Shown one piece after another: positions 8,688 to 64,000 of a DNA stretch of 64,000 bases; position 1 is the stretch's first letter; every line of letters begins with the position of its first letter. Source of the stretch: Geosiphon pyriformis uo1 (Eukaryota; Fungi; Glomeromycota); NCBI GenBank assembly GCA_016748015.1, contig JAAOMT010000664.1, positions 1,363,892 to 1,427,891 of the forward strand, written 5' to 3'. The notes under the pieces are model-generated. The model made no database searches, was not told the DNA's origin, and saw only the letters and a program-made list of their open reading frames with translations. The position numbers were made by a program, and so were the translations under genes.

Positions 8688-8730
8688 GAATTAATTGATC
8701 AATCGATAATGTGCAGATTAACATGTGACT
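8688..8730 (+). promoter_or_regulatory. Conserved ~45-bp upstream element of BTB-TLDc copy 1
   Basis: AATTAATTGATCAATCGATAATGTGCAGATTAACATGTGACT recurs in reverse complement upstream of copies 2 (26100-26140) and 3 (37763-37804). It contains the E-box-like CATGTG. Confidence 0.5.
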
Positions 8731-8797
8731 TGAGCTCCGGATAAGTAAACGACTGTGTAGGAGAAAAAGACCTCACTCAGACTTCTCATATTTACCA

Positions 8798-10299
8798 ATG
8801 TCACCCCAACAATACTTTCACGCTTTATCCAATGATTTTGGAAATTTATTTGACAGTCAGAAATTCTCTGATATTAGAATTATAGTTGGCGAAGCTCCAA
8901 ATATTAGAACCTTTCATGCTCATTCCCAAATTTTAGCAGCAAGATCACCATATTTTGCTGTAGCACTCTCTAGCAATTGGATTAAAAGGGAAAATAATAT
9001 CATTATCTTCCCTAAACCTAATATTTCACCAAAGATTTTCGAAATAATTCTCAGGTAAGGTTTTTATTTGCTTCAAAGTAATTTTGCCAACATGAAATTC
9101 ACTGATTTTATTTCCTGAACAGATATATTTATAATGGCGAGATTTCTCTTGATAAACATGGAGTACCTACTATTTTAGAATTGCTTGTTACCGCTGACGA
9201 GCTTATTCTAGAAAACATAATTGATCACCTTGAAGACTATTTGATTGAACACCGTGCAAAAGAGCTAAAGGAAAATTTTGCCACTTTGCAAAAAACTTCA
9301 TTTTTGCATGATTCTTTCAAGAAGTTACAAGTATTCTGCACCGAAATAGCTGCTAACAATCCAGCCATAGTTTTCGATTCGCAAGATTTTACCTCTCTTA
9401 GTGAAAAGGCTCTTGTCTCAATTTTAACCCAGGATGATCTAAATATAGAAGAATCTGAAATATGGGAAAAGATTGTAGAATGGGGAATTGCTAAATTAGA
9501 TAACAATATTCAGACGAAAAAAGTTCCTTACTGGACAGATGAAAACTTTAACGCCTTTAAGGAATCCATCGAAAGGCTTCTACCTTTAATCCGCTTCTTT
9601 AACATATCTTCAGTTGACTTCTATCACAAAGTAAAACCATTTGCGAGAATTTTACCTGGAACTTTATATGAAGATCTTTTACATCATTATCTCGTACCGG
9701 GTAGTCATCAAAAATCTGTAGACGCTCAGCCATTACGTTTTTCCCGATTAAATATTGATTCAAATCTTCTTCGATCATATAATATAAAACAGCTTGATCA
9801 TTGGATTCAAGGCAAAAACAAAAATACTCCTTTTGAAAGCAAACTTGGAAATGATTTTAAATTGTTACTTCGAGGCAGTCGAGACGGATTTACTCCAGCC
9901 GATTTTCATCGATTATGCGATGATAAAGGAGCAACAATTAGCGTAATCAAAGTGAAAGGAACTGGTCAGATAATTGGCGGCTTTAACCCACAATCTTGGC
10001 ACTCTCGAGGTGAATTTTTAAATGGAGAAAGAAGTTTTATTTTTTCTCTTGGAGATGACAATGCTGAAAATGCTATACTTAGCAAATTTGTTACAGGATA
10101 TGGACCTTATGGTGGAAAAGATTTGGGACCCTATTTTGGAAATCTCAATATGAGTTTGAGTGGCGACTTTAAAAATAGTTCAGGGTGCTATTGTCAAAAG
10201 ACAATTAATTATGAGCATGCTTTAATGCCTGGGTCAGAAAATCAAGAGATGAATTTTTCTGTCGAGGAGTATGAAGTTTTTCAAATTATAAAAAGATAA
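8798..10299 (+). CDS. BTB/POZ-BACK-TLDc domain protein, copy 1 (putative Cullin-3 substrate adaptor)
   Basis: Exons are 8798-9054 and 9123-10299 (GT-AG intron at ILR/YIY). BTB: SDIRIIVG..FHAHSQILAARSPYF. BACK: LTQDDLNIEESEIW..LIRF. TLDc: LLLRGSRDGF..FHRLCDDKG..IIGGFNP..SFIFS..GPYFG..VEEYEVF. Confidence 0.93.
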
Positions 10300-12209: not shown

Positions 12210-13347
12210 CCTGGACCGCCTATTATGCCTTACGTAGATTATTTTAATAGTTAGACATATTAGCTCTCAAATTTCAGTCAGAATGGAAGCTTTTTCTCTT
12301 ATTATTGTTCTCAAAAACAAAAGCAAGTTTCATAATGCTTGTTGGCTTTTTTAATTTAGTTTATTCTTAATTAACGAATAAATTTGCTAGCTATTAAATC
12401 ATTGTTTTGATGAGAAGCTCTATATATATATATTAATATTTGAGCGAAAAACATCCACTTTTACTGAATTGAAGGGTTTCAATAATTTTGCAAATTTATT
12501 GAAAAATTTTCAATATTTAATTGAGAATATTCTGTTCCTAACACTATTCGTCATGATCGGATGAAAAATTTTTCAATTTATAACTGACTGTCTTAAAAAA
12601 AATATAATAGTGCTAGGAGCAAAGGCTATTGCAAAAAAATAGAGGTGATTTTTCTTCAATCACTTTAAACTGCATATTTAATGTAACGAGGATGGTAACC
12701 CTTTTGCAAAAGAAGTTTATTCAACTTCAGTTTTTAAAAACAAAAAAATTGTAGAGTATTTAAATTTGCAAAATTAAATAAATTCAAATTATCTCCTAAA
12801 ACTGTATTATTGACAAAACAATGATCTAAAACTCCATTAATAAAACCAAAAATAAGAATATTTTTAAAAAGCAGTTGAAATTTTTTATGATTTAAGTAAA
12901 TATTAATGAATAAATTATAATTATTTTAAATCTACAATTTTAAAAAACAAACAAACATGTACATTATAAAAAAAAACTTTTTTTCTTTTTTATAAAATTA
13001 CGTTTATATGTATATATTTTCTCTAAAAAAAATTAATTATGATACACAGTAAAATGATTATTTCTTAGAGAAATTTATTAATTTAATAACAAAATTCATA
13101 AAAATGAGATTATAAAACTTTAGCCAAATATTATACATAAGTAAAATTTGATTAAAGGAATTTTTTTGATGTGAATATTTAAAAATCAATTTATTGAATT
13201 TATTTTGAATGTAAATATTAAAAAAAATCTTTGCCAATTTTAAATATATAGATAATATGCAAATCAAAATTTACAAAAAACAATTTCTTCAAAATGTTTT
13301 TGATTTGCATATGCCAAATATATTAAAAAAATAAGATTTCTAAAATG

Positions 13348-16300
13348 TGTTACCAGTTTTAACTTATAAGTTACAGGATTAACCTGATAAGTTATTTAAA
13401 ATAGTCTGAGTTTTTTATATTCTAACTTATCACAAAGTCGAGTTGTTTTAATGTTGTATTGCAAAAGCCAAATTTTATTATCTATTTCAAATTTAGATGT
13501 TTCTTAATATCATTTATCCACTTTTTTGTATTTATTAATACCATTTTCAAGCTTACAAATTAGCTCCTTCTAAATTTCTTTAATTTTAATGATGAATTTT
13601 TTAGCAACAGAGTTAACTGATTCTTTGACCATAGAAGTATTAAATCAAAAATTTTATCTGTAATATGTAACAAATAATGTCATTATAATTAAAGTTTAAA
13701 ATATGTTATTATATGCAAATTTCATTCAAAAAACCATGCAATTTAACAATATTTTAAAAACCAATTAAGTTAATTTCTTTATAATTATATTTTTTAAGCA
13801 TAGAAAAAAATAAGCTATCTTAGTTAAATAATTTATTATTATTAAAACTGCATTTTTTCTAAATCTAAATATATTTATATGAAATCTATAAAAATTGATT
13901 TCCAAAGCCATTTTAAAATAGACAGAAGTTAAAACAAATCAAAAAGCAGATAACAAAAAAGTTTAAACCGAAAACAAATATTACATAATTTTGTATATAT
14001 TTTTAAAAATTTCTTTTGCTGTGGCTGCCAAACATTTTTAGCAACTAATTCAAAGATTTTACCAACTCCAAAATGCTTAAAAAGTAGAATATTATAATTG
14101 TTATTCAAATTTACAATTATTTCAAATATAAATTTATTAATGTATCTATATTTTATAATAAATAAAATAGAATTTGAAATGTTATTAATAATTTTTCAGC
14201 AAATTTATTAATACTTGTAGCTTGTTAATTGCTTCAAAAAGCTTTAAAATAACACAATAATTTATCATTGCTTAGCTTTGAGTTATATAGTTTTTTGTTG
14301 ATCATAAATTTTATCATCTTTTTAGATTTAAATTTCAAATAATATAAAAAAATATCTGTTTTGTTCTATAATAAACTGGAATAATAAATTATTAAGCTTA
14401 ATACTAATAAAATTCTAAAAAATTTTATGATTACAAAAAACAATAATTAGATATTAAATGCCAACAAAATTATAATATTATTGCTCGAAAATGACAATAA
14501 TTGTCAACAGTTTCTTATTAAAAATCTATAATTAATTCTTTAAACAAAAAATTTACTCAAATAGAAAACATTTAAATATAATTGATTATTATTTTTTTGG
14601 TTGTAATAAATAGCTTCAAAAACAAAATCCAAAATATTAGTTTTAATAATATATAATTTAACAAAATTAATATAAATTAATATAAAAACAAAAATAAAAA
14701 CTTGTTTTAAAAATTTAAATATATTATTAGTTTGTAATAATCATATTGATAGGTTTTTATCTTGTTATAGTAGTTAATAATATTACTATATTTGAATAAG
14801 TTTTAATAAACTGTGAATAAAAATTAGCAAATTTAAAAAAAATTAATATCTTTACCAAATAGAATATTCTCCAATTTAAAATTGTTTAAAATTCATCTAA
14901 ATATCTTTAAAAGAGATAATATATCCAAAAAATTTAATTTAAAATTGGTTGAATGCATATTTTTTATAACTTATATTGTTATAAGTGTTTTTAACTGCTT
15001 TAATATTAAATATCTAAAAAAGACGTTATTTTCTTAACAATAAGTATTAAGATTTTTATTAAAGATCTAAAATGATAAATAAAACTTTTTTTCTAATTTT
15101 TTTCTATGTATTTACAAAGAATCTTTAATTTCAGTTCTAAAAAGTTGTCAATTGGATCAAAATAATATTTTACTTTTTACAATTTAATTAAAAAAATATA
15201 CAAACAATTCTTTAACAATAGATTATTTTATTTTTTATTAAACATGTTAACTATTCTTTATATTTAACTAATAATTAAAAATTATTAAAAAATTCTAATT
15301 TATTTTTTTATTAATATACTAAAAACAGTTTTAATAAACAAATCTTTTTTAAAAATTTTAAATGTATTTAAAAAAGTTTAATACTATATGGTTTTTAATT
15401 AATTAATAGATTATACAATTATAATTAAGATAATTTATAAATAATAATATAATATAAACTTTTAACAATATTAAAAATAATTTTTTCTTAATGCTTGATA
15501 ATATTAAAAATTAGCCATTGGGTTTTTTGACTAATATTTTCTAAAATAATAAGATATTTGCTAATAATTTTTAATAATATAAAATACTGTTTTTGATAAT
15601 ATAATATTAAATTATATTGCAAAATTTTTATAAATAGAGCAAAAAAATACATTTAAGTTAATTGATACTTCTATAATTATATTAAAACTAAAATTTAGCA
15701 GTTAATTTTAATAATACAACTAAAACCAAATACAGAATTAGATATTAAATAATAATTTTTATTAAAAATAGTACTTTTACAAAACATCTGACAAAACAAA
15801 AAATCTAATATTAAATTGTTAAAAAATTTTGAACTCAAAACTAGAATAAAAATTTGCTTTAGTAAAATTTTAAATACTAAGTCTAAAAACTAAAATGTTT
15901 AAATATATAGTTTTTATTGTATTTAAACTTATTTGTTTATTAATGAGACTGCCAAAATTTTTTTACTTTTTTCACTAGAATTAACAAAAAATATGGCCAA
16001 TTTTTTTTTAATATAAACAAAAATTATTAGATTGTTAAAATTTTTCTGCTTTTATAAATGATTTGTAATAAGTCATATTAATTTGTAATGTTTTATTTCA
16101 AAATACAACTAATAGTTAACTGTTTACAAAAATTAAACAAATATAAAATTATTACTTTTAACAATATTTAAAAAGTTATTTATTATAATAAACTCTATTT
16201 CTAATAATTTTATTTAATATATTAGCATTAATAAGATTAACAAATAATCTTGAATATTATTACACAATTCAAAACAAAATTGGTCAACTAATGCTTTTTT

Positions 16301-16990
16301 TCTCCAATTAAAATTACATGTAAACTGCCAAAATTTTATATTACATATTGTAGCAATCTAATTTTTTTGTCAGAAATAATATAATTGGTTGGCTGGCTAA
16401 GACTTAAGCTTTTTTGTATCTTCTTATTTTAAATTTTCAAAGAATTTTTATACAATAAAAAAGATTTCTTAATTAACAACACTAACTAAATAAAAACTGT
16501 TTCTTAACTAATTTACAAATTAATCCAACTTGACTTGTATTATCTGAATAACAATAAAATTAAAGTTGAACAATAAGTTATATCTTATTTATAAAATCTT
16601 AAAATTTAAGAACAATTATCATCAAACTTTTCAGATAAGCTAATTTTTAATTTATAAGTAGTAGTTCGAAGTGGAATAGCTTAAACATGTTGTAGTTATA
16701 AGAAGATATTCTTAGCTAGATGTTTTTTTTGGTTAACTACTTACAGTATTTAACAATTTTAACAAGATTAATTGTTTTTAAAACATGATTAAGAATTAAA
16801 TTGTTATGAATTATGCAAATTGGCAAAAAAAGATAAATAGACAATCAAGTTGGAAACCAAAAAAAATAGTATAAACAATTTAATTTACTTAAAAAATTAA
16901 AACCAAATCTGACTGGTCTTTTTATTTATACTCAAAAAATTATAGATTTATTGCTAACCAAATTAGCAAGCTGATTTACAAATGTTTTAA
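13348..16990 (+). mobile_element. Heavily mutated retrotransposon-like relic (possible RT-RNase H remnants, LTR-type order)
   Basis: AT-rich core with more GC-rich ends. Weak decodable remnants are PLG..F*(Q) and VFDNII (~15510-15610, cf. YxDD), IDTS (~15661, cf. TDAS) and NMANFFL (~15990, cf. NxADxLS). Boundaries are approximate. Confidence 0.35.
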
Positions 16991-17026
16991 AATAGTTAGA
17001 ATTTCTCTGATCGATCATTTCTTTTT

Positions 17027-17250
17027 AAAACCTGGGAAATATTCATGCAAACTTGGAAATTCAGAAAAGTGCTAACTGTATAAATAATAGCAAACTCGAG
17101 AAATATTGATGGAGAACTTGGGAAATAATGAGGGATTCGAGAAATTCAAAATGCAAACACAAGAAATATCAATTGCAGACTGTGTAAATAATAACGAAAT
17201 TGGGGAAAAATTAATAGCAACTTATGTAAATATCTCTGTAAATAATGACA
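17027..17250 (+). repeat. Degenerate tandem array of ~10 units of 20-24 bp
   Basis: Units resemble GCAAACT(C/T)G(G/A)GAAATA(T/A)T(G/A)AT, e.g. gcaaactcgagaaatattgat, ggagaacttgggaaataatga, gcagactgtgtaaataataa. Confidence 0.6.
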
Positions 17251-24470: not shown

Positions 24471-24689
24471 CACGTAAAAAAATTTAAAAATTAGTAAAAA
24501 TTTTCAAAGTATTCTTTTATTTTATTAGTCTACACTTCATACCAAGGACTATCCTCATCTAACTTATAAAAGTCTTTGCCAAATTGTTCTACATCCGAAT
24601 AACTTGACATTTGGGCATCGCGGTTATGTCTACCTATCTTTTAATTAGTTAAAGTTGTATAAAGAAACATAAATAAAATAAAAGCAAAT

Positions 24690-26008
24690 TTATCTTTTTA
24701 TAATTTGAAAAACTTCATACTCCTCGACAGAAAAATTCAAATGTTGATATTCTAATCCAGGCATTATAGCATGCTCATAATTTGTTGTATTTCGACAATA
24801 GCACCCTGAACTATTTTTAAAATCTTTGCCACTCAAAATCATATTGCGATCTCCAAAAAAGGGTCCATAATTTGGCCCATCAAAAGGTCCATATCCTGTA
24901 ACAAATTTGCTAAGTATAGCATTTTCAGCATTGTCATCTCCAAGAGAAAAAATAAAACTTCTTTCTCCATTTAAAAATTCACCTCGAGAGTGCCAAGATT
25001 GTGGGTTAAAGCCGCCAATTATCTGACCAGTTCCTTTCACTTTGATTACGCTAATTGTTGCTCCTTTATCATCGCATAATCGATGGAAATCGGCTGGAGT
25101 AAATCCGTCTCGACTGCCTCGAAGTAACAATTTAAAATCATTTCCAAGTTTGCTTTCAAAAGGAGTATTTTTGTTTTTGCCTTGAATCCAATGATTAAGC
25201 TGTTTTATATTATGTGATTGAAGAAGCTTTGAATCAACATTTGATCGTAATGGCTGAGCGTCTACAGATTTTTGATGACTACCCGGTACGAGATAATGAT
25301 GTAAAAGATCTTCATATAAAGTTCCAGGTAAAATTCTCGCAAATGGTTTTACTTTGTGATAGAAGTCAACTGAAGATATGTGAAAGAAGCGGATTAAAGG
25401 TAGAAGCCTTTCGATGGATTCCTTAAAGGCGTTAAAGTTTTCATCTGTCCAGTAAGGAACTTTTTTCGTCTGAATATTGTTATCTAATTTAGCAATTCCC
25501 CATTCTACAATCTTTTCCCATATTTCAGATTCTTCTATATTTAGATCATCCTGGGTTAAAATTGAGACAAGAGCCTTTTCACTAAGAGAGGTAAAATCTT
25601 GCGAATCGAAAACTATGGCTGGATTGTTAGCAGCTATTTCGGTGCAGAATACTTGTAACTTCTTGAAAGAATCATGCNNNNNNNNNNNNNNNNNNNNNNN
25701 NNNNNNNNNNNNNNNNNNNNNNNNNNNNNNNNNNNNNNNNNNNNNNNNNNNNNNNNNNNNNNNNNNAAAATCTTTGGTGAAATATTAGGTTTAGGGAAGA
25801 TAATGATATTATTTTCCCTTTTAATCCAATTGCTAGAGAGTGCTACAGCAAAATATGGTGATCTTGCTGCTAAAATTTGGGAATGAGCATGAAAGGTTCT
25901 AATATTTGGCGCTTCGCCAACTATAATTCTAATATCAGAGAATTTCTGACTGTCAAATAAATTTCCAAAATCATTGGATAAAGCGTGAAAGTATTGTTGG
26001 GGTGACAT
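24690..26008 (-). CDS. BTB-BACK-TLDc protein, copy 2 (assembly gap 25678-25766)
   Basis: Exon 1 translates identically to copy 1 up to the gap. The frame is open from the gap to the stop at 24690; the ORF track starts late only because no ATG/TTG/GTG occurs earlier in frame. Confidence 0.88.
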
Positions 26009-26545
26009 TGGTAAATATGAGAAGTCTGAGTAAGGTTTTTTTCTCTACGTATTAGGCATTTAGCTATTGACACACAGTTATATACTTATCCAGAGCACAA
26101 GTCACATGTTAACCTGCACATTATCGATTGATCAATTAATGGATTATCTAAGCAGCCCAATTTTTACCGCCCAAAATGAGTATCACTTTTGATCTCAAAA
26201 ATTATGTGCAACAAAAAAAATTGTTTTGAATAAAAAACCTTGGGATAGTTTATTTATCAATTTTATATTTCAATATACCATATAATAATAACATGGTAAA
26301 AACATATATTTCATATATTGTTTATATTATTTACATTTTTAAAATTAATTATTATTGAATATTTTTCTTTGAAATTTTTTTACTTATTAATTAAAATAAA
26401 ATTATATATTTATTCAATATAAACTTGATTTAATTTTTCTAAAATACATTGTATTTTTTAACTGCATATTCTGCAAGTTTGCTACAAATTCTTTTTCTAT
26501 AGATTCATATAAGATCAAGTTTTTCTAGCAAATCTCTAATTGTAA

Positions 26546-26940: not shown

Positions 26941-28115
26941 AATACCTTCCTATAATTTTTAATAAAACTATCCAAATAATATTAGTAATTATTCTTTAAT
27001 AAAAGCCTTCATTCAATCTCTTCAAAAGATCTCGAGAAATACATGGTTTCTTTTCCATATCATTTTCTACTCTATTCAAATACAGTTTAGAATATTATTC
27101 AACTTTTTGTTGATTAAGAAACTATAATCTATTAAATTTAGGATTAAAAGATTACATTTTAAGTTGTAGAATTTCAAAAGGATTTTTTTAAATATAAATA
27201 ATAACTATAAATAAGTAATCGCCTACTTAATTTCTTAACTTTTTGATACTACTCTTTAATGAGCGAATCAAATAAACCCCTATCTCCTGTGAAAGATTTT
27301 ATGAAAGTTTTCGATTTTTGAGTGAATGGTAAAGTTTTTTATTTGATTTGATTTTTAGGCGAATCTCATACAATCAATAAAGTTTGTAGTTCCATTTTTT
27401 AATAATATCTTAATAATTTTAGGACTGTTTAAAAATAGAAAGCACCGATATAAATTGTAAAGGTATCACCTAACTTAGCGAAACTGCATTAAAATTTTTT
27501 TAATAAATAACCAATTCACAGCAAATCCCGAGTTATTAAAGAGATATGTCGTACAATAAAAAAGAAAATTCCACACAAATCATCGAATATCATAGGGTCT
27601 GCTAATAATATTGAGAAGATGCAAAATTTCGGAAACTTATGAATAATAAGAATCCGGCCTGGTGCTTTAGGTAATTTTTTCACGCTATGAATTTTTGCTT
27701 TCAAGAATTTCGTTTTGCAAGATATAGTGAGATAAGATGGGCGATGATATAAGGAGAGCCATTTAATTAAGGTTTATAAATTCCTTAGAAAATCTTATAT
27801 ATATATATATATATAATGCCTTGGTTAACTCAGAGATTAAAAGTAATATAATTAGTTAAAGGTGTAAAAAGATGTGAAAGATTTAATTAGTTTCATTCGC
27901 TTCAATATTTACCTTTGAAATTAACATAATTAGTTAAAGTCGTTTCATTCACATAAATATTTAGAATTATAAATTTCATTAACTTGCTCAAATAATTGAC
28001 TAAACTATATTTTACTTTTCGTTAGCAAATTTTTAAAGTCCATAAAATTATTATAATCGAAAATTACCAACTGTATTTAAAAATAAATTTGTTTAATAGC
28101 ACATATAAAATTAAT
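26941..28115 (+). repeat. Segmental duplication, left flank of the LINE (matches ~60963-62162)
   Basis: Direct, near-identical copy. It gives twin ORFs 27516-27704 and 61555-61749. Confidence 0.95.
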
Positions 28116-31100
28116 CTCATCCAAAAATTCTCAAAAGAATTATTTTTGAAAAAAAAGTTTTTTTGTTTTATTGTTTTGTTGCATCCTTATTACAATTTCA
28201 CAAAATACTAACTCTTTTGTAATAAACATAATAGCTGTCTCTAGTGTTATTATGCTGAAAAAAGGCGTCTAAAAAGGCACTTCATGGTTTAGCAAATGAT
28301 TTTTCTTTCAGAAGAAAAGAGTCCCAATTGGCAATATCAAAGACTTTGATAAGAATAAAAATATTTCTTTGGTCAAACTTTTTTCTGGCTTAGATGTATA
28401 CTTGAATATGAATAATGAGTCTAACAATAATAAAAACAGTATTGTATTAACTGGTGGTGGTGTTACAACAAGTAATAATAATAAAGTCCTCTTTGATTTA
28501 GTGATTATTACTTCTAAGATAAAAAAAATTAATACTAGTATGATAAGTAGTTCTCTTTTTAACTCTCTCAGTTTTAATATTAATGAAGATACAGTGTTTT
28601 TTCTCTTTTTTGTTCTCTCAAATTCAATGTAAACAATCTAATTAGAAAATTTTTTGCTTTAAACATTAATCTTTTAGCTATTAAGAGTAAATTTTTTAAA
28701 GACAAAATTGATATCAATTAGAAATTTTTTTTCAAGTGTAAACGATTTTAGGAGAACTTCGACTTTCTCAAAATTTAATGAAATTGTCTGTATAACTTTT
28801 ACATCTAAAGAAACTTTGTTAAAGATATTAAGTTTGGCAAAAATAACTAAGATTGATATAAACAGTAATCTTAATTGTCCTGGTAAACAACCACATAGAT
28901 CGGATTGTAATAATCAACGAGAACATTTAAGGTGGCTATGCATGCTGTACTAACTAAATTTAAAGAAATTATGTCGATTAGAATACAATTGGTTGGATTA
29001 TGGCAAAAGACATTGGTTAAAATCGATGATCATAGATAAGCTGATCTTCTGGCTTTTAAATAGTCTATCTTAATTAAAAAAACACTGTTAAAGTAACCAA
29101 AACTAATATTGACAAAACATTATAAGATTCCAGAAACATGCATAGAATCTTATTCTACACTTTGCTAATAAAAATAACAACTTATAATTTGTAAAACATT
29201 GTAGAAATAATTAATAAAAAAACATGTATAATCAATTATTATTTAGTTATATATATAAGAGCCAAATATGTTATATTGTATTTCGAACCAAGAAAAAGCA
29301 TAATATTAGCATTAACAGTATTTTCAGTTTTAAAAATTCTACTTAAAACAAAAAAAATCCAATTTAGTCTATTTTAATGTGTAAATATTTCAGTCATGTT
29401 TTTTTTATGTGTTTAATCAATACATTACCAACTTTTATGATTAAATCAATCTTTGTTTTTTAGATTTAGATAAATACAAACTTACAGTTATTTATATTAA
29501 AAAAACAGTCTCAATTGTTTGTTTAGTTTTTTTTGATAAGTTATTATATATTTAAGTTATTGATTATAGTGTTTTTAGTTTTTTTTTGAATCTTTATTTC
29601 AAGTTATTATTTTTTATGGCTTAATAATTTCTTTTTTTTTTTTTTTTCTTTTTGGACACTTATTTAAATGTTTTTAAGTAATTTTTAGAGCTATTAACTA
29701 ACCAGATTTCAGTAATTTTTATCAAATTGGATTTAATTATGGTGTTTCTATTTTTGGTTTTATATATTTTACATTTATTAATAATTGTTTTAGCTAAAGT
29801 TGTTGTTAATAAAAATATAGAAATTTCAAATTGGTCTTTTTTTTCTTACTTTTGATATTTTAAATGGTTTTTAATTTTTAGATTCGTAGTTTAAAAACCA
29901 AAATATTAGCATTAAAGAATTTTATTAGTGCTATTTTGGCTCAATTAAATCTTTTGGTTTTTAATACTGGTTTTGTTTTTAATCTGGTTTTTCAATAACT
30001 GAGCTATATAAAAAGTTATTATATATAATGTGTGTGAATTAAACAACTTTGTTAAACAATTCAATATTATTTTTTAACATAAAAGTATGTACAATTTAGT
30101 CTCAATAATTTTAAAACAAAGTTAAAAAATAAGATTAAGTTATAAATTATAAATAAGTTTGATAAAATTAAAGTTTTTATCTAGATATTAATTTTTATTA
30201 CATAAGTTTTAATATTATTATTATTATGAATATTGATTTAATTCAATATATTTACAAAGTTATAAAAATAGTTAATTGGTTTTTATCAATATATCTAATA
30301 TTTAAAAATTATTTTTTGGTCTTAATTTTTAATTAATACATTAATATTACTTTGAAAAAAAAGTTAAATCAATCTAATAAAGTTAATTTAATAGTAATTA
30401 TTGCTTTAAATAATAGTTTATTTATAATATTTGGTAAAAATTTTAATAAAAACAAATCTGATTATAGTATAAGTTTTAGAAAATTCAGGAATTTAAAACT
30501 GTTTAATTTTTTAAATAGATTTTTTTTAGCAAATATCTTATATAATCAAACTTTAAAGGAACCAAAAAGTATATTAATTTTATTTTAGTTATTAATAATT
30601 TTTATAGTTTAATATTTAATCAGCTTATTTATTAATTAGATAAGTTTTTTAATACTAATTATTCTGTTGTTTTTATAAATATTAGTTTGAAAAGTCTTCT
30701 TAATTTTTAGCTTAATTTTATATATAAATAAACTAATAAAAGTATAAAGTTAATAGAATTAATGTGAGTGTAAAAAAAAATTTAATAATATAACTTTAAA
30801 TATTACTTTAAACATAATAAATATTTTAATAAATACAAATTGGTTGGTAATCTAATAAAATATGAGCTTTGCTTATTAAGATAATAAATTTTATGGTTAA
30901 TATTGTATTATTAAAAACATAATATTAAGATAATAAAATAATTAAAAACACTGTATTTTTTAAATTTTACAGTTTAAAATTGCTTGTTTTTAAGATTTTA
31001 AAAGTATTTAAGTCGAATAATTTAAATAGGCTTCAGTTTTTGTAAATTAAATAAGTTAGTTTAAATATTGATTGAACTATTGAGTTTGATAAATTTTTTG

Positions 31101-34100
31101 TAAATAATTTTAATAAGATTAAAATTAAACAGATATTGGCTTAAATCAAAAAAACTTATAGGTTTTATAAGATAATTATAATAAAATTCGTTAAAAATAG
31201 TCATATTAAAACTGTTATAGTCAAATATATAGAGAATTTTATTACAATAAAAATCAAATAATTAAGAATATTATTAAATTATTTGGTTAATAATAATATA
31301 TTAATTTTGAAATCTAAACTAGTTAAGTATAAAATAGATTCAATTATGAAAAATTAGACTAGAAAATATGTTATTAAAAATATAATTCTTTTTATTGACA
31401 ATAACAATTTGTCTTATTTGTTTATATTAATAATAATGTATTATTTAATATAATAAAAAAAATTAGTTTTGTCAAATTTTTGCTAATTATTAAAAATTTT
31501 TTAAATAATAATACTGCTAATTTGTTTGATATATTCAATAAAATGTTTTTGAGTTTGCTTAATAAGTGTTTAAAAAAAATAGTTCTTAATATGCGAAAAA
31601 AAGCTTAAATATCAATAATTTTAAAGTTTTATAAATAAAAAAGTGTATTTATAAATATAAAATCTATTGTTTTAATTAAAACTATTAGAAAAAATATTTT
31701 TCTAAAATTCTATTTAATTATATTTTGGTGGCTTATAATTCTGTAAATTGGTTATATTTAAACAATAATTTAATTAAAATAAAAATATATGTCAAATTTA
31801 TCAAATTCTTTAGTTATATTTATTATAGTCATATTAATAGAATTATAATTGACTTTAATTTGTTTAATAAATATATAAGATACATAATAGTTTGAATTAA
31901 AGTAAAAGTTTTTCTTTTTTTTTGTAAAAAATCTTTTTTAATATTTTTTCGTTATTAGTTTAATTTAAAATTTGTAATAAAAATTAACAAAATTAAATTT
32001 AATATATATTTGATATTATTTTTGGCTGTTAATACTTTTATAAATAATATAATTTAAATTGATAATAGTATTATAATCGAATTAACAAACTAATAGATAG
32101 CAAAAAAAAACAGTATTATATGATAATAAATTAATCAAAAAAAATAATTTAACTTTTAATAAGCAAATTAAATTAGTAAAAATTTAATATGTAAAATTAG
32201 TTTCATAAATATTTCAATTGCTATTCTTTTTAAAAATAACAAAAAAATTTGAAGATAAAAAAATAGTCTGTACTGTTAACAAAAAATAATACATTAGTAT
32301 AATTTTATGTCTTATATTAACATTCTTAAATTTTAATATTAAGTATTAGCTATATTTTTTAATAAATTTTTATTTAATATACTTTACAAAAATTACAATT
32401 ATACAAATTAAAAAAAAAAGATAAAAATACAAAAAAAGAAATAAAAAAGTTAATATTATTGTATTAATCTAAATATAATTTGAATATAAATACATTTTTA
32501 TAACTTATTTTAAAAATAGAATGGTTAATTATATAATATTAATAACTAATACATATGATTAATTATAATTAAATAAGAATTAAAAAATAAAAGTTTTATC
32601 TGTAATAATAGTTATATAATAATACAAATTATTTTAAACATTACTATTAAGTTTTTAAAATTATTTTGAATAAAACTGTGATTATACCAATGAATATTAA
32701 AATTAAAATATGTTTTTAAGCATAAACAATTTCATAATTTCAATTGTAATAACTAATAAGTCTTATTAATATTTGAATATATATTTATTATTTAAAAATT
32801 TTTTTGGTTTTAGTTTAAAAAAATGAATTCAAATATAAATTTTTCTCTTTTATAGTTTTATAAAAAACAATTTTAACAAATAGTTCTTATATTTAGTTTT
32901 AGTTATTTTATAACTTATTATTAATTATAAAACTTAGTTTAGTTTTATTAATAAAAATGTTTATATTAGATAAAATTGTTTAATTAAAAAAGATTTAAAA
33001 TTAAAAACTTATTTTTCTTAAGATTTTCTAAGTGAAGTTATATATTATTTGTTTTTTATAATTTAAAGCTCTTTAATTAGATTTAAATAGAAAAAAAAAA
33101 TAGCTTTAATTATGAATTTTATCAATGTTTATAATATTTTAAACAGGTTTTTTAAATATAAATTGTTAGATTTACAGATTTTAAATAATTTATTTCAGTT
33201 TTTAATTAAGTTAAAAATCAATTTACTAAACAATTTTTTGGTTAGCATTACCAAAATTTTTTGTGCAACAAAGTTTCTTTAATAATCTATATATTTAATA
33301 TATTTTGTTTTAAAAATAGTGTTTTGGTTTTAAATATTTTGAATTATTTAAAGTATTTTAAGAATGTTAAATTTTTTAAAATTAAATAATTGTCTTATTA
33401 TATACTTTGGCTTGAAAAGTATTTGTTTATTTAAAATTAAAATTTTTATTGATAGTTTAATTAAAAATCTTAATTTGTTTTATATTATTAGTAATATAAT
33501 AGCTTATTTTTCTAACTTAAATATAATAATAAGTATAAAAGTCTATGGTTTATTGTTTTTAACTTTGACTGAATTACAAGTTATAATATTAATTCTTAAA
33601 TATATTATAGTATTTACCAGAATTTATATAAACAATTAAACTGCTTTAAATACTTGTTAAACAGAATTAAAATTGATTAAACTAGATTTTTATAATAATT
33701 AATAGATAAAATGCTATTATATTATTAATATTATTAATAATAAAAACATTTTTTTAAGATAATCAAAAATAAAAAATTATTATTGTGTTTTAAATAATAA
33801 ATATGCTAACAAATTAGCATATTAAACTTTTTTATAATTTAATACTATTAGTAAATATTTAAAAAAATTTTGTGGTTGTTAATAATAAAGTAATTTTTGA
33901 TAATATATGTTACTTTATAAAATTGTTAAATAATATAATTTAATGTGTTTTATAGAAAATAAGCCTTAGTATTAATATTATAAATTGTTTATATATTAAT
34001 AATATTAAATAAAAAATCACTGTTTTAATTTGGTATTTTGACTTACATATGTTTATTAGATATATTAGCAAGATTACAGTAGAATTATATACATATATAA

Positions 34101-34830
34101 TAAAAATATTACATAAAAAATTGTCTGTTATAATTAAAAAATAACTTTATAGTAAGTACTACTCAAGTATTTTATGTATATATTATAGTAATATAAAGTT
34201 TTTTGATTATAGTTTTATTTACAATTCAGACTTTTCTGCTCATAAAAATCTGTTGGCTAATCAGCTTAAGCTTTAAAAGTTTTTAACCAGTATAAAATGT
34301 TATTATTTTTTGTATTTTAGTTTTTGTATTTTGATATTATTAATATTAATTTATATATGGCATTAAATAAAGGTTTCATGTTTAAGTTTTGGTTAGCTAA
34401 AACTATATTAGTTTTTAAGATCAAGTTGGCCATTTTTTATTTGGTCAATTTTGTGCATAATCTGATTATTAATTACAGTGACAGAATTTGGTTGTCTAAT
34501 TCAAAACTTTGAATGAAAATGGAGAAGAATGGTTCTTTGTCTGTTGTCAAGTTGAAGTCAATTGATGTTCAGAGGCTTTTAGGTTGTATTTTGAAAGAAA
34601 TGACACATTTATTAAAAGTCAGACTGTTTGTTTTGAATCTAGAATTAAGCAATTGTTTTATACTAGTGCTAGTAACAATGTTTCTGTTAATATAGTTGTA
34701 TAGTATTGTCTTGACTGACTGAGTGACTGGTCATATGTAGAAAGTGCATGAATTATATTTAATTTAAAACTTTGGCAGTTGTATTGTATTAAATAGTGAT
34801 TGGGTCACACTCGGAAAATGAAAAAAAATA
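28116..34830 (+). mobile_element. Full-length non-LTR retrotransposon (LINE: ORF1 with Zn knuckle; APE endonuclease, RT and RNase H), inactivated by massive C->T/G->A mutation
   Basis: TSD AAAATTAAT at 28107-28115 and 34831-34839, an A-rich 3' tail, and an empty site at 62154-62162. Decodable motifs are C-x4-H-x4-C (~29379-29412), APE VIIYNVCELN (30015, cf. xNVRGLN) and GKNFN (~30432, cf. GGDFN). RT motifs are SLN*SKSFSFFL*KIF (31889, cf. GLxQGxxxSPLLW) and FINN (32037-32048, cf. FVDD). RNase H remnants IFIDS/TELQVI are in ORF 33364-33639. Confidence 0.9.
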
Positions 34831-34839
34831 AAAATTAAT

Positions 34840-36616
34840 AGAAATATAATCATGTGATAAAAGGCTTTGTTTCTATAACAGGTATTTAGATTCGGTATTT
34901 TTTTTACAGAGTGAATTGATAGTTAAAAATTTATTCGAGTAATAATGTATTTGTTAAATCTTTATATGCAGTAACTTCATTTTATAGAGCTTTTGATAAT
35001 TTATTAATTAATAATGATAAAATATTTGGTTTTTTTAAATTAAATGAGCAAGGATTATTTAAAATTAGCCATTTTATTTTTATGCATCATATATAGAAAA
35101 ATTCTAAGCAGTCTATTTTCAACAAAAAACCAGTGTTGAATTAAGCTCATATTTACATAGTTTGACTATTTCAAAAAAGGAATATGATTAAAAATTTTTA
35201 TCTAATAAATTAATGTGCCATTTTTTTCTATATAATACACTCGGGGGCGGAAGAGAATTAAATGTTACTTTATTATATAATTTTAGATTATAGTCAATAT
35301 TTAATATTTTACCTTTCTAGATGCATTGTCAATTAATATATTAATTACTGCCAGTCCTAAAATTTTTTTTTTTTTACAATTGAATGAAATTTTAACAAAT
35401 TCTAGATTATCTTTGCAAATTTTTTTTAAGTGGGCCTGCCTATGTTAAACCATCTTAATCCATTTGATTGATTTCGCTTTAAGCCTTTTGTAAATAATAA
35501 GGAATTTCGATTTAAAATTATAAATATTAGTAAGCTTCATTAAAATTCTCATGTAAGACTCATTGGTTGAAAACAAAGGCAAGAAAAAGATGAATGCAAT
35601 TAAAATCCAAAATCTATGCCCTGAAAAATAAAAATAAATAAAAGAGATAAAATAATGCAACCCATAACAAAATAAAATGAAATGGAATTTTGGTATTATT
35701 TACAGTAAAACTATAATCGTATTTTCAAATATTCTATATCTAGACTTAATATATGTATTCTATAGCTCTTTAAGTCTGCATATTCCTCCTATACTTAGTA
35801 GGGTTCAGGCTGCTGAGTAGCGTCAGACCAAGTTGAACAACAAGGAAATTAATTTAGAAAGACGCATCAAAGAAAATTGATATCAAAGGGTTAAAGCAAC
35901 ACACGCCTAGCTAAATAATATAAAAATATGAAAAATTCTTGTAAGGATCTCCAGTTTCTCAAAGATCTTTTCTTAGGAGGCCTAAGGTCTAATAGAGAAA
36001 ATACTCCGAGTGATTTAGTAGCTATATATCGAACAATTACTCGCATCTCTTTGAAAAACCCATATCTAGAGAAAATTTTCACATTCATCAATATTTATCC
36101 AAAAATATTAGTGAATGCGAAAAGTGAAATTATATTTTGAATATATACCAAGACTGTGGTTTTCAACGTGTGAAACTAATTGCTGTTAATCGAGAACTGA
36201 TCTTAATAGAAAACTATTTTATTTTTTTTGATAACTTTTACTCTTTTCGAGTCTCTTTATTAAATATTTATTAAAATCATTTGTTTATATCATTGTGGAG
36301 TAAAAAACTAAAGCACCATCTAATAATTTTAATTAGCGGAGAAACTTAGGTATATATTTGAAAGTTTTATTTCTAATGCTATTCAGCTAAAGAGCAGTTT
36401 ATAGCTTAACTTGTGATAAAACCTATACTTTAGAAATTAATAGTTGTTTAATAAGAAGTCTTTTTTAAATTTATTTGATGTTTTAAAATAGATAAATGTT
36501 ATTCTTTTAACTTTATTGTTGAACTTAAAATGGTAGGCTGTAAAATATTTCGCTAGTGAAAGTTTCTAAGATAGACAGCACAACCTTCAAAAGTATAAAA
36601 TTTAATTAAAGCAAAT
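34840..36616 (+). repeat. Segmental duplication, right flank of the LINE (matches ~62163-64000 and, inverted, 10300-11405)
   Basis: catgtgataaaaggctttgtttctataac... resumes colinearity with the copy at 62174 onward. Confidence 0.95.
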
Positions 36617-37691
36617 TTATCTTTTTATAATTTGAAAAACTTCATACTCCTCGACAGAGAAATTCATATGTTGATTTTCTGACCCAGGCATTATAGCATG
36701 CTCATAACTAATTGTCTTTTGACAAGTGCACGCTGAACTATTTTTAAAATCATTGCCACTCAATCTAATATCCCATCCAAAATAGGGTCCCCAAACTGTT
36801 CCACCATAAGGTCCACATCCTGTAACAAATTTGCTAAGTATAGCATTTTCAGCATTGTCATCTCCAAGAGAAAAAATAAAACTTCCTTTTCCATCTAGCC
36901 ACTGATCCCGAGAGTGCCAAGATTGTGGGTTAAAGCCGCCAATTATCTGACCAGTTCCTTTCACTTTGATTACGCTAATTGTTGCTCCTTTATCATCGCA
37001 TAATCGATGGAAATCAGCTGGAGTAAATCCGTCTCGACTGCCTCGAAGTAACAATTTAAAATCATTTCCAAGTTTGCTTTCAAAAGGAGTATTTTTGTTT
37101 TTGCCTTGAAACCAATGATCAAGCTGCTTTATATTATGTAACTTAAGAAGCTTTGAACCAGTTGATCGGAATGGCTGAGCGTCTACAGATTTTTGATGAC
37201 TACCCGGTACGAGATAATGATGTAAAAGATCTTCATATAAAGTTCCAGGTAAAATTCTCGCAAATGGTTTGACTTTGTGATAGAAGTCAACTGAAGATAT
37301 GTGAAAGAAGCGGATTAAAGGTAGAAGCCTTTCGATGGATTCCTTAAAGGCGTTTAAGTTTTCATCTGTCCAGTAAGGAACTTTTTTCGTCTGAATATTG
37401 TTATCTAATTTAGCAATTCCCCATTCTACAATCTTTTCCCATATTTCAGATTCTTCTATATTTAGATCATCCTGGGTTAAAATTGAGACAAGAGCCTTTT
37501 CACTAAGAGAGGTAAAATCTTGCGAATCGAAAACTATGGCTGGATTGTTAGCAGCTATTTCGGTGCAGAATTTTTNNNNNNNNNNNNNNNNNNNNTTCGC
37601 CAACTATAATTCTAATATCAGAGAATTTCTGACTGTCAAATAAATTTCCAAAATCATTGGATAAAGCGTGAAAGTATTGTTGGGGTGACAT
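36617..37691 (-). CDS. BTB-BACK-TLDc protein, copy 3 (assembly gap 37576-37595)
   Basis: ATG at 37691 (MSPQQYFHALSNDF..), with an open BACK-TLDc frame to the stop at 36617. The gap hides most of the BTB domain and the intron. Confidence 0.85.
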
Positions 37692-38450
37692 CGGTAAAAT
37701 ATGAGAAGTTTGGGTGAGGTCTTTTTTCCCTACGATCAGTATATATATTTATCCGGAGGTGAAGTCACATGTTAACCCGCACATTATCGATTGATCAATT
37801 AATTCCGAGTCTTTAAAAATTCCCCATTATGTTGGTTCTTTAAACATTATCTCTGAGAGGTCATTCTTAATAAAACCGCCTCCAAAGATCACAGCCTCTA
37901 TTTGAAAAGCATGAAATATCTAAACTGTTAATTTTGAATCCAGATTACTCTTGACTGAAACTTTTTCTTTATTATATTTACTCTCAAACTATCAAACCAT
38001 TTAATAAATTAATGAGAATATTTTTTTTTAAAATAAGTTATTCAGAATTGGTCGATTTTGGTCATTTTTCCATATTTACATTCATCTTTCCAAATAATTC
38101 AGATTGTTTAATAAAGAATTTCTTAATTTAAAGAGAAAAAATATTTTGGCAGTAATTTTTTATCAATAATAAAAACTAGTGATCAAAGTTTTTTTTAAAG
38201 TTCCATTTCAAGATATTGAAATATTTTATTCACAATAAGCAATTTTTTCGAACAAAATTGATTGATTCTATTATCGTACTTTTTCATTCTAACTATGATT
38301 CTTTTAAATCTTATAGAAAACGAAATCCAAAACTCCATAATTCTTCCTAAATTATTTTAATTTGTTTTTTCCTAAAACGCTTACAAACTATCAAAAAATT
38401 ATAAACAAAATTTTTAGGACGACTAAGATTTTTATTCTTCATTAGAATAC

Positions 38451-60962: not shown

Positions 60963-63900
60963 AATACCTTCCAATAGATTTTAATAAAACTATCCAAATA
61001 ATAATAGCAATTATTCTTTAATAAAAGCCTTCATTCAATCTCTGCAAAAGATCTCGAGAAATACATGGTTTCTTTTCCATAACATTCTCTACTCTATTCA
61101 ATACAGGTTAGAATAAGATTCAAATTTTTATTGATTAAGAAACTATAATCTATTAAATTTAGGATTAAAAGATTACATTTTAAGTTGTAGAATTTCAAAA
61201 GGATTTTTTTAAATATAAATAATAACTATAAATAAGTAATCGCCTACCTAATTTCTTAACTTTTTGATACTACTCTTTAATGAGCGAATCAAATAAACCC
61301 CTATCTCCTGTGAAAGATTTTATAAAAGGTTTCGATTTTTGAGTGAATGGTAAAGTTTTTTATTTGATTTGATTTTTAGGCGAATCTCATACAATCAATA
61401 AAGTTTGTAGTTCCATTTTTTAATAATATCTTAATAATTTTAGGACTGTTTAAAAATAGAAAGCACCGATATAAATTGTAAAGGTATCACCTAACTTAGC
61501 GAAACTGCATTAAAATTTTTTTTAATAAATAACCAATTCACAGCAAATATAAAATTACTTTTTATGCATATCCCGAGTTATTAAAGAGATATGTCTTACA
61601 ATAAAAAAGAAAATTCCACTCAAATCATCGAATATCATAGGGTTTGCTAATAATATTAAGAAGATGCAAAATTTCGGAAACTTATGAATAATAAGAATCC
61701 GGCCTGGTGCTTTAGGTAATTTTTTCACGCTATGAATTTTTGCTTTCAAGAATTTCGTTTTGCAAGATATAGTGAGATAAGATGGGCGATGATATAAGGA
61801 GAGCCATTTAATTAAGGTTTATAAAATTCCTTAGAAAATGTTATATATATATATATATATAATGCCTTGGTTAACTCAGAGATTAAAAGTAATATAATTA
61901 GTTAAAGGTGTAAAAAGATGTGAAAGATTTAATTAGTTTCATTCGCTTCAATATTTACCTTTGTAAACTAACATAATTAGTTAAAGTCGTTTCATTTACA
62001 TAAATATTTAGAATTATAAATTCCATTAACTTGTTCAAATAATTGACTAAACTATATTTTATTTTTCGTCAGCGAATTTTTAAAGTCCATGAAGTTATTA
62101 TAATCAAAAATTACCAACTGTATTTAAAAAGAAATTTGTTTAATAATACATATAAAATTAATAAAAATATAGTCATGTGATAAAAGGCTTTGTTTCTATA
62201 ACAGATATTTAGGTTCGGTATTTTTTCTTACATAGAGTGAATTGATATTTAAAGGTTTATTCGAGTAATAATGTACTCGTTAAATCTTTATATGGAGTAA
62301 CTTCATTTTATAGAGCTTTTGATAATTTTTTCATTAATAATGATAAAATATTTGGTTTTTTTAAATTAAATGAGCAAGGATTATTTAAAATTAGCCATTT
62401 TATTTTTATGCATCATATATAGAAAAATTCTAAACAGTCTATTTTCAATAAAAAAACCAGTGGTGAATTAAGCTCATATTGACATAGTTTGACTATTTCA
62501 AAAAGGAATATGATTAAAAAATCTTATCTAATATATTAATGTGCCATCTTTTTCTATATAATACACTCGGGGGCGGAAGAGAATTAAATGTTACTTTATT
62601 ATATAATTTTAGATTATAGTCAATATTTAATATTTTACATTCCTAGCTGCATTGTCAATTAATATATTAATTACCACTAGTCCTTAAATAATTTTCTTTA
62701 CAAATGAATGAAATTCTAGATTATCTTTGCAAATGTTTTTTAAGTGGGCCAGCCTATGTTAAACCATATTAATCCATTTGATTAATTTCGCTTTAAGCCT
62801 TTTGTGAATAATAGGGAATTATTTCGATTTTAAAATTATATTTATTCGTAAGTTCCATTAAAATTCTCATTTAAGACTCATTCGTTGAAAAACAATGGCA
62901 AGATAAAAGTAATTAAAATCCAAATATCAAAGCATTGAAAAATAAAAATATATAAAGAGATAAAATAATGCAACCCAAAACAAAACAAAATGGAATGGAA
63001 TTTTTGTATTATCTACAGTAAAACTATAACTCCTATTTTCAAATATTCTATATCTAGACTTAATATATGTATTCTATAGCTCTTTAAGTCTGCATATTCC
63101 TCCTATGTTTAGTAGGGTTCAGGCTGCTGAGTAGCGTCAGACCACGTTGAACAACAAGGAAATTAATTTAGAAAGATGCATCAAAGAAAATTGATATATC
63201 AAAGGGTTAAAGCAACACACGCCTAAAAATATGAAAAATTCTTGTAAGGATCTCCAGTTTCTCAAAGATCTTTTCTTAGGAGGCCCAAGGTCTAATAGAG
63301 AAAATACTCCGAGTGATTTAGTAGCTATATATCGAACAATTACTCGCATCTCTTTGAAAAACCCATATCTAGAGAAAATTTTCACATTCATCAATATTTA
63401 TCCAAAAATATTAGTGAATGCGAAAAGTGAAATTATATTTTGAATATATACCAAGACTGTGGTTTTCAACGTGTGAAACTAATTGCTGTTAATCGAAAAC
63501 TGATCTTCTGATATTGATAATTTATGAATTTAAAAATTGGTTTGATTATTTTAATTGACACCAAGGTAAACTATTGCAAATTATGTGAAAAGAGAATATC
63601 AACCTTTAAGAAAAAAGGATGAAAGTTATCTTAAAAAATACTAATGGTTTGGTCGGTGGTATAGAAGTATATGAACCTAGAAAAAAAATTTTGACACTGA
63701 TAATAAAGTTGTATCCAATTCTTGGGAATATAAATATTATCTAATTGAAATTGCTATTATTAATAATTCTATATTTATAGGAAAAGTAAGAAATAACTAT
63801 TATAAACAAAAAATGGAATGCCACTTATAGTTTGTAAGGCATTTCTGGGAATTTCAAAAAAAAAAGAAAATAAATTGATATTAAAAAACATGGATTAATA

Positions 63901-64000
63901 GAAAACTATTTTATTTTTTTTGATAACTTTTACTCTTTTCGAGTCTCTTTATTAAATATTTATTAAAATCATTTGTTTATATCATTGTAAAGTAAAAAAC
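60963..64000 (+). repeat. Uninterrupted (LINE-free) copy of the segmental duplication unit
   Basis: Colinear with 26941-28115 plus 34840-36310, and an inverted match to ~10606-11400. Confidence 0.95.

What the first reader, a model, noticed from the sequence alone, without database searches (positions are those of the whole stretch)
28107..34839. Internally dated, transposon-targeted C->T/G->A hypermutation (RIP-like genome defence) in a probable Glomeromycota fungus
Seen in the sequence: a complete LINE with a 9-bp TSD and A-tail interrupts a repeat whose empty-site copy (62154-62162) is still about 90-99% identical by eye. The insertion should therefore be no older than that modest divergence. 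Yet nearly every conserved LINE motif is destroyed almost only by transitions toward A/T: FVDD->FINN, Q->TAA, W->TAA/TAG, P->F, GGDFN->GKNFN. Both strands are hit, and the contexts include CpA, CpT and CpC, so CpG-methyl decay alone does not explain it. Established: RIP is characterised in Ascomycota, with RIP-like signals in some Basidiomycota, and I do not know it as established in Glomeromycota. Inference: an active cytosine-mutating defence acts on TEs here. Ancestral residues are inferred from generic LINE motifs, not from an alignment.
Basis: partly seen in the sequence, partly recalled or inferred. Interest (0 to 1): 0.9.

Follow-up and report, generated by a model that had tools for sequence, protein, structure and literature searches.

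The report
Transposons erased by C-to-T hypermutation
In the soil fungus Geosiphon pyriformis, a jumping gene that landed in a fairly young duplicated stretch has since lost about 70% of its C and G letters to one kind of change while the surrounding host DNA lost only 3-5%; this resembles the RIP genome defence of moulds but is not set off by duplication alone, and I found no published report of it in this fungal group.

Summary
A 6.7-kb LINE (28116-34830, 9-bp TSD) sits in a duplicated host segment whose other copy, and an outgroup copy, are empty. At conserved sites it lost 68% of C/G by C>T or G>A (core 73-79%; reverse changes 3%), against 3-5% in its flanks, with leakage about 150 bp outward. 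A young duplicated LINE pair elsewhere differs by 317 transitions and 4 transversions, a bias also seen in raw-data contigs. CpG mutates about 3-fold faster, yet 77% of changes are non-CpG, with a 5'-T bias, no CpA preference and no strand runs. Ty3 LTRs are hit too; linked 92-98% identical host duplicates are spared, so classical RIP fails. Corrections: gene conversion made the 99% flank tracts (unconverted tracts differ 6-7%), and a nested solo LTR interrupts the LINE. Best reading: heterochromatin-targeted, all-context cytosine methylation (two DIM-2-like enzymes plus DNMT1) coupled to unusually fast C>T change; a RID-sister enzyme is the rival. Enzyme, timing and adaptive role are inferred. 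The scan found this process before on other DNA of this genome.

The parts
26941..28106 (.). Left host flank, part of a duplicated intergenic segment; 24% GC, CpG not depleted; C>T leakage in the last ~150 bp
28107..28115 (+). Left target-site duplication AAAATTAAT
28116..34830 (+). Full-length non-LTR retrotransposon (ORF1; ORF2 with APE, RT and RNase H), hypermutated to 17% GC (core 13.6%); GC-rich relatives are 44%
28705..29335 (+). Best-preserved remains of ORF1 (RRM region); the segment 28616-29115 is less mutated (44% of C/G lost)
   Evidence: tblastn
29995..30650 (+). ORF2 start (ATG>ATA) and APE endonuclease remains; GGDFN>GKNFN at 30433-30447
31405..33261 (+). Reverse transcriptase and downstream region; FVDD>FINN at 32037-32048, Trp>TAA at 32055-32057; interrupted by the solo LTR
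32069..32607 (.). Nested solo LTR of a multi-copy family (ends read TG..CA once C>T/G>A is allowed for; 4-bp TSD ATAG at 32065-32068 and 32608-32611), 12% GC; younger than the LINE insertion by position
33409..33819 (+). RNase H remains
34821..34830 (+). A-rich 3' tail; the last ~200 bp of the element are least mutated (33%)
34831..34839 (+). Right target-site duplication AAAATTAAT
34840..36204 (.). Right host flank, a conversion mosaic, not hypermutated beyond ~150 bp
36617..37603 (-). BTB-BACK-TLDc host gene, one of four linked 93-98% identical copies; open frame, Ts/Tv about 1: negative control
9181..10299 (+). Second BTB-BACK-TLDc paralogue, spared control
60963..63507 (+). Empty-site copy of the duplicated segment; single 9-mer at 62154-62162
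13316..17030 (-). Second AT-rich multi-copy relic with a weak Ty3-type RNase H match (14552-14719, E 6e-4) and the same survivor signature

Best explanation
After insertion, a transposon copy is marked as heterochromatin by being a transposon, not by being a duplicate (inferred: H3K9 methylation and/or small RNA). Its cytosines are methylated in all contexts, CpG most densely (DNMT1 upkeep plus two DIM-2-like enzymes; inferred). Methylated or enzyme-engaged cytosines turn into thymine tens of times faster than in unmarked DNA, through 5mC deamination with poor T:G repair or methyltransferase-linked deamination. The process is cumulative and dispersed on both strands, fades at element ends, leaks about 150 bp into host DNA, and runs to about 10-14% GC. 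Shown here: direction, size, spectrum, TE confinement, edge effect, leakage, continuation after duplication, and presence of the candidate enzymes. Inferred: methylation itself, the enzyme, mitotic versus sexual timing, and whether it is a selected defence.
For: 68% versus 3.4% directional loss. Flank 15/474 C/G beyond 150 bp versus 10/52 within 150 bp, Fisher p=4e-5. Young segmental duplicate L084/L085: 317 Ts, 4 Tv, about 90% towards A/T, equal per-site rates on both strands (6.5% and 6.2%), no strand runs or clustering. Six pairs give CpG 1.9-4.2 times non-CpG, with 77% of events non-CpG. Applying the young-pair spectrum to a 44%-GC copy reproduces the old copy's GpC excess and TpC/GpA deficit; a flat rate does not. 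Graded GC series of 44, 28-41 and 8-16%. Ty3 LTR: 143 versus 20 directional changes. Host duplicates Ts/Tv 0.75-2.3; flanks keep CpG. Two BAH-MTase genes whose best PDB match is the DIM-2 structure, one DNMT1 and three Pre-SET loci. Precedent: Dim2-dependent mitotic C>T in Zymoseptoria TEs (PMC8016269).
Against: No methylation data were available. The spectrum differs from both characterised DIM-2s (Neurospora methylates CpT preferentially; Zymoseptoria mutates CpA; PMC8016269); here ApCpT and GpCpT are the coldest sites. CpG rates of roughly 50-150 times background exceed what I know of spontaneous 5mC decay in animals and plants (about 10-fold, own knowledge), so an extra factor is needed. 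Other Glomeromycota keep DIM-2 and DNMT1 and methylate TEs with no reported signature (PMC8298701, PMC8647823). The simulation over-depletes CpG and CpA (CpG o/e 0 versus 0.28 seen). No HP1 chromo-shadow hit (uninformative search).
Confidence: 0.55

Rival explanations
1. A RIP-related pathway run by the RID/Masc1-sister methyltransferase: repeats are recognised by homology (perhaps only at high copy number), in many weak rounds tied to nuclear fusion or cryptic sex, with relaxed context preference.
For: A stand-alone C5-methyltransferase (KAG9301204.1) groups with two Ambispora proteins as sister to Dikarya RID/Masc1 (SH-aLRT 89, quick tree). Close homologues were found only in Ambispora, and the one Ambispora contig fetched shows the same 8-17% versus 35% GC compartments. 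Leakage and protected ends are RIP-like. Many weak rounds would blur strand runs.
Against: Linked 1-2.5 kb host duplicates at 92-98% identity, 12-55 kb apart, are ideal RIP substrates yet unmutated. No CpA preference and no strand runs. The enzyme keeps the canonical ENV motif VI, not the EET/EQT of RID. RID is reported across AMF without RIP signatures (PMC8298701, PMC8647823).
Confidence: 0.22
2. A cytidine deaminase (AID/APOBEC-like or an unrelated fold) edits transposon DNA or cDNA.
For: 5'-T bias: TpC(H) 0.082 versus ApC/GpC 0.042; near-pure transitions.
Against: cDNA editing predicts one strand and a single moment at insertion, but rates are strand-symmetric and continue after segmental duplication. 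No clustering; CpG is hottest; no APOBEC_N match in the genome (one family only).
Confidence: 0.08
3. Light-induced pyrimidine-dimer damage, poorly repaired in heterochromatin (Geosiphon lives at the soil surface; own knowledge).
For: TpC and CpC exceed ApC and GpC.
Against: Non-dipyrimidine sites (ACA 0.045, GCA 0.057, ACG and GCG about 0.2) mutate readily, while ACT and GCT, which can form dimers, are coldest. Only 5 adjacent double changes among 312, about what chance gives.
Confidence: 0.04
4. Simple age: the insertion is old, the flanks were homogenised by conversion (or the empty site arose by precise loss), and ordinary AT-biased drift plus CpG decay did the rest. Variant: an already decayed template was copied in trans.
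For: Conversion tracts are real. Nearest sampled siblings differ by 5-10% transversions and 9-17 gaps per kb, against 1.3-3.5% and 7 per kb for the flanks.
Against: Even the 82%-identical outgroup flank has Ts about equal to Tv and unchanged GC. The 317:4 pair needs no flank date. 77% of events are non-CpG. No near-identical degenerate sibling was found (best candidates only).
Confidence: 0.04

Closest known systems
Dim2-dependent mitotic C>T mutation of TEs in Zymoseptoria tritici (PMC8016269)
   Same: C>T transitions concentrated in TEs, over tenfold rate increase, non-CpG sites, DIM-2-like enzymes present, no need for sex
   Different: There over 98% of changes are at CpA and CpG is spared; here CpG is hottest and all non-CpG contexts are hit with a 5'-T bias. 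Dikarya versus Glomeromycotina. Causation tested there, only inferred here.
Classical RIP (RID-dependent; Neurospora, Leptosphaeria, Podospora)
   Same: Near-pure C:G>T:A transitions, AT-rich TE relics in a two-compartment genome, leakage into flanks, a RID-related gene in the genome
   Different: Linked host duplicates spared, no CpA preference, no strand-coordinated runs, ENV instead of EET/EQT in motif VI, no known sexual stage. A recent survey restricts RIP-like signatures to ascomycetes with CpA preference (PMC12543289); I found no Geosiphon or Ambispora entry in its held tables.
CpG/TpCpG hypermutation of TEs in basidiomycetes and Tuber, linked to Masc2/DNMT1 (PMC4352252)
   Same: CpG is the fastest context; probably methylation followed by deamination; DNMT1 present
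   Different: Here non-CpG sites supply about three quarters of events and erosion runs to 10-14% GC.
Index-based RIP signal in Zoopagomycota (Zoophthora radicans, PMC11105155)
   Same: A claim of RIP-like change outside Dikarya
   Different: That claim rests on dinucleotide indices; here it rests on aligned copy pairs, and the standard substrate index is only borderline (0.87 in the core).

Membership tests
RIP (RID-dependent) | Directional C:G>T:A transitions far above background in repeats | tested here: met
   795/1167 versus 30/892; 317 Ts to 4 Tv
RIP (RID-dependent) | Triggered by homology alone: any linked duplication over about 400 bp and 80% identity is mutated | tested here: not met
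   BTB-TLD gene copies, flanks and the duplicated RID-like gene show Ts/Tv 0.75-2.3, unchanged GC and (TLD genes) open frames
RIP (RID-dependent) | CpA (or CpA/CpT) preference | tested here: not met
   CpG 0.196, CpC 0.068, CpA 0.061, CpT 0.049; same pattern in six pairs
RIP (RID-dependent) | Strand-coordinated runs from one round | tested here: not met
   Runs 83 versus 77.4 expected and 65 versus 73.5 expected (p 0.85 and 0.09); several weak rounds could mask runs
RIP (RID-dependent) | RID/Masc1 orthologue present | tested here: inconclusive
   Sister to the RID clade at SH-aLRT 89 in a quick tree; motif VI is ENV, not EET/EQT
RIP (RID-dependent) | Acts premeiotically and needs RID | not testable with these tools
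   Needs crosses or mutants
DIM-2-linked heterochromatic C>T mutation | DIM-2 orthologue with BAH domains and H3K9 methylation machinery | tested here: inconclusive
   Two BAH-MTase loci with best PDB match 9baq/9bap (DIM-2 by my knowledge of those entries), exon-level scores only; three Pre-SET loci; HP1 search uninformative
DIM-2-linked heterochromatic C>T mutation | Mutation confined to TE regions, with non-CpG contexts | tested here: met
DIM-2-linked heterochromatic C>T mutation | Mutated sites carry non-CpG 5mC and mutation depends on DIM-2 | not testable with these tools
   No methylome or mutant available
CpG-only methylation decay (Masc2/DNMT1 type) | Changes essentially confined to CpG | tested here: not met
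   1011 of 1316 events non-CpG
AID/APOBEC editing of retroelements | Strand-biased, clustered, at insertion; deaminase gene present | tested here: not met
Non-LTR retrotransposon (APE-RT-RNase H) | ORF1 plus APE, RT and RNase H in order, A-tail, TSD | tested here: met

The most novel reading that the evidence does not exclude
A RID/Masc1-sister methyltransferase with an intact catalytic motif, kept in Archaeosporales, runs an enzymatic transposon-killing pathway that spares host gene duplicates. RIP-type mutagenic defence would then predate the Dikarya-Mucoromycota split, and if it is tied to nuclear fusion it would be a footprint of cryptic sex in Geosiphon.
Probability: 0.2. Interest if true: 0.9.

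Novelty: new variant of a known kind. Interest (0 to 1): 0.7.

Why it matters
Surveys place repeat-directed C>T mutagenesis in ascomycetes and report none in Gigaspora or Mucoromycotina (PMC12543289, PMC8647823). A saturating, TE-confined version in Geosiphon, with its own spectrum and without RIP's cost of destroying gene duplicates, extends mutagenic genome defence to the mycorrhizal lineage. It also makes an old question testable: can heterochromatic methylation alone erase transposons, or is a RID-type enzyme needed? In practice, divergence-based TE age landscapes for this fungus are inflated, because copies separated by only 0.06% transversions already differ by 4.6%, and many annotated 'hypothetical proteins' are eroded LINE frames. 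This locus adds a filled/empty pair with a measurable leakage distance and a nested clock.

Tried and rejected
Rejected: assembly artefact (a public run holds 90% of sampled words of 27000-36000; contigs laid on L084 show 128 transition and 4 transversion places; probably the same sample, so not independent biology). L084/L085 as alleles: argued against because each variant sits near the depth of other single loci, about 95-110, and as separate insertions because they share target site and 3' flank. CpG-only decay, UV, cDNA editing and simple age (see rivals). My first impression that the GC dip inside L081 was graded erosion was wrong; it is a nested Ty3 element. Led nowhere: no GC-rich member of the window's own subfamily was found (nearest GC-rich relatives 13-16% transversions away), so ancestral states come from sites conserved across sister subfamilies; the metagenome scan gave two distant loci; the top 120 homologues of the LINE protein were all Geosiphon; UDG gave one weak hit; chromo-shadow search uninformative; the Geosiphon genome paper was not held, so I could not check whether it mentions this.
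Full report
Host. The assembly has 128.3 Mb in 792 contigs. A methyltransferase exon from contig C657 is identical to KAG9301204.1 of Geosiphon pyriformis, on a contig of the same length, and the top 120 homologues of the LINE protein are all from that species.

Structure. Self-comparison joins 26941-28115 and 34831-36204 to 60963-63507. A 9-bp TSD flanks 28116-34830 and occurs once at 62154-62162. An 82%-identical copy on C697 is empty, so empty is ancestral; a 92% copy on C619 has an 88-bp deletion over the site. GC-rich relatives in the same genome (L042, L043; 44% GC) encode an RRM-like ORF1 and APE, RT and RNase H and align over the element's length. The window copy is full length but holds a 539-bp solo LTR with a 4-bp TSD just after the FVDD motif, a 32-bp deletion and frameshifts. 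The order of events read from the sequence is: segment duplication, LINE insertion, LTR-element insertion, reduction to a solo LTR. Both nested layers are now at 12-14% GC.

Size and direction. At sites conserved across six relatives, 795 of 1167 C/G became T/A and 30 of 892 T/A became C/G; the core lost 73-79%, the end segments 33-67%. In the filled flank, C>T/G>A changes hit 15 of 474 C/G sites beyond 150 bp but 10 of 52 within 150 bp (p=4e-5), while other changes are not raised there; the empty copy shows 2 of 45. Poisson-corrected, the LINE rate is 14-46 times the flank rate depending on assumptions.

The date. Flank identity is a mosaic: tracts 1.2-1.6% apart alternate with tracts 6-7% apart, and in one tract the empty copy is closer to C619 than to the filled copy. 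Sibling LINEs, all 8-18% GC, differ from the window copy by 5-10% transversions, against 1.3-3.5% for the flanks. This may reflect different source elements or an insertion two to three times older than the flanks imply. The conclusion does not depend on it. L084 and L085, which share a target site and 3' flank, differ by 317 transitions and 4 transversions over 6953 bases. Scaling the four transversions by the flank spectrum gives about 40-55 times background (roughly 15-200 given the small count; my arithmetic). Contigs from a public run show the same bias, 128 to 4. Other pairs give 210:12, 171:9, 71:5 and 409:43, so even the 44%-GC copies are affected. About 85-90% of these transitions run towards A/T.

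Spectrum. In the youngest pair, per-site rates are CpG 0.196, CpC 0.068, CpA 0.061 and CpT 0.049; TpC(H) is 0.082 against 0.042 for ApC and GpC. Six pairs agree: CpG is 1.9-4.2 times faster, but 77% of events are non-CpG. Rates are equal on both strands, with no runs and no clustering. Applying this table repeatedly to a 44%-GC copy until 13.6% GC reproduces the window copy's GpC excess and TpC/GpA deficit, which a flat rate does not; it over-depletes CpG and CpA. One cumulative process therefore largely explains young and saturated copies.

Target. A Ty3 LTR shows 143 versus 20 directional changes with the same contexts, and 13316-17030 is a multi-copy relic with a weak Ty3 match. Four linked BTB-BACK-TLDc copies (93-98% identical), the flanks, and the duplicated RID-like gene show Ts/Tv 0.75-2.3 and unchanged GC. 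Selection can hide mutation in genes, but the intergenic flanks are also spared and keep their CpG. Duplication alone does not trigger the process.

Candidate enzymes. The genome has two BAH-methyltransferase genes whose exons match the DIM-2 structure best (that 9baq is DIM-2 is my own knowledge), one DNMT1, two DNMT2-like genes, three Pre-SET loci and a stand-alone enzyme that groups with two Ambispora proteins as sister to RID/Masc1 (SH-aLRT 89, quick tree) but keeps ENV in motif VI. No APOBEC_N match was found. AMF are reported to keep all five methyltransferase types (PMC8298701), so presence alone proves nothing.

Mechanism. Most likely (0.55): heterochromatin-directed all-context methylation coupled to fast C>T change, as shown for Dim2 in Zymoseptoria mitosis (PMC8016269) but with another context profile. 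A RID-sister pathway acting in many weak rounds is the main rival (0.22). Deaminase editing, light damage and plain age fit poorly. Methylation, enzyme, timing and adaptive value are inferred, not shown.

Comparison. It works like RIP in outcome but fails three defining tests (homology trigger, CpA preference, strand runs), so I do not file it as RIP. It is not CpG-only decay of the basidiomycete type (PMC4352252). RIP signatures are reported absent from Gigaspora and Mucoromycotina (PMC8647823) and confined to ascomycetes in a survey whose held tables do not list Geosiphon or Ambispora (PMC12543289). An index-based claim exists for Zoophthora (PMC11105155). My paper searches found no report for Geosiphon, but the genome paper was not available. 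At least eight earlier scan reports reached similar conclusions on other DNA of this genome; I read them after my tests and do not count them as evidence.

Limits. Verdict: a real feature and a new variant of a known kind, interest 0.7.

Noticed in passing
L031/L033 (G000:C657:788280-789372) and L035 (C657:820713-821336): Stand-alone C5-methyltransferase KAG9301204.1 with an apparently truncated second copy 32 kb away; close homologues found only in Ambispora; sister to RID/Masc1 but keeps ENV in motif VI.
   Followed up: partly
L032 (C702:1327528) and L036/L040 (C666:681025): Two old DIM-2-like paralogues; also one DNMT1 (L034) and two DNMT2-like genes (L037/L038, L039).
   Followed up: partly
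L090:1-2400 and 7500-10000: An Ambispora gerdemannii contig has 8-17% GC blocks beside 35% GC genes; the first block has GpC o/e 1.87, as in the Geosiphon relics. It suggests the process extends to Ambispora.
   Followed up: partly
window 9181-11405, 24671-26140, 36203-37805, 63226-64000 and beyond: Four BTB-BACK-TLDc copies in a mosaic of conversion tracts; a fifth flank copy on C619 has an 88-bp deletion across the LINE insertion site.
   Followed up: partly
window 40695-40890 and 41195-41362: Two more eroded pieces of the same LTR family as the nested solo LTR.
   Followed up: no
window 4984-5233; L082:4811-5825: Piece of a second LTR family; in L082 a less eroded copy (28% GC) leads into protease and dUTPase frames, and it recurs inside several LINE copies.
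   Followed up: partly
L041 (G000:C757, 15-kb contig): A non-LTR element unlike the rest of the family, on a short gapped contig of 35-50% GC; possibly from another organism in the assembly.
   Followed up: no
L042 ORF2, near the N gap: A stretch of RT sequence is repeated across a 20-base N gap, probably a scaffolding artefact.
   Followed up: no
window 49276-58898: Gene-rich 31-36% GC block with RasGAP and MOR2-PAG1_C matches and normal CpG content; F-box/LRR gene at 43477-44681; lipase-3 piece at 7110-7511.
   Followed up: no
L004:3-968 (- strand): Open frame with a PIN-like DDX60 helicase domain directly beside a saturated LINE piece.
   Followed up: no
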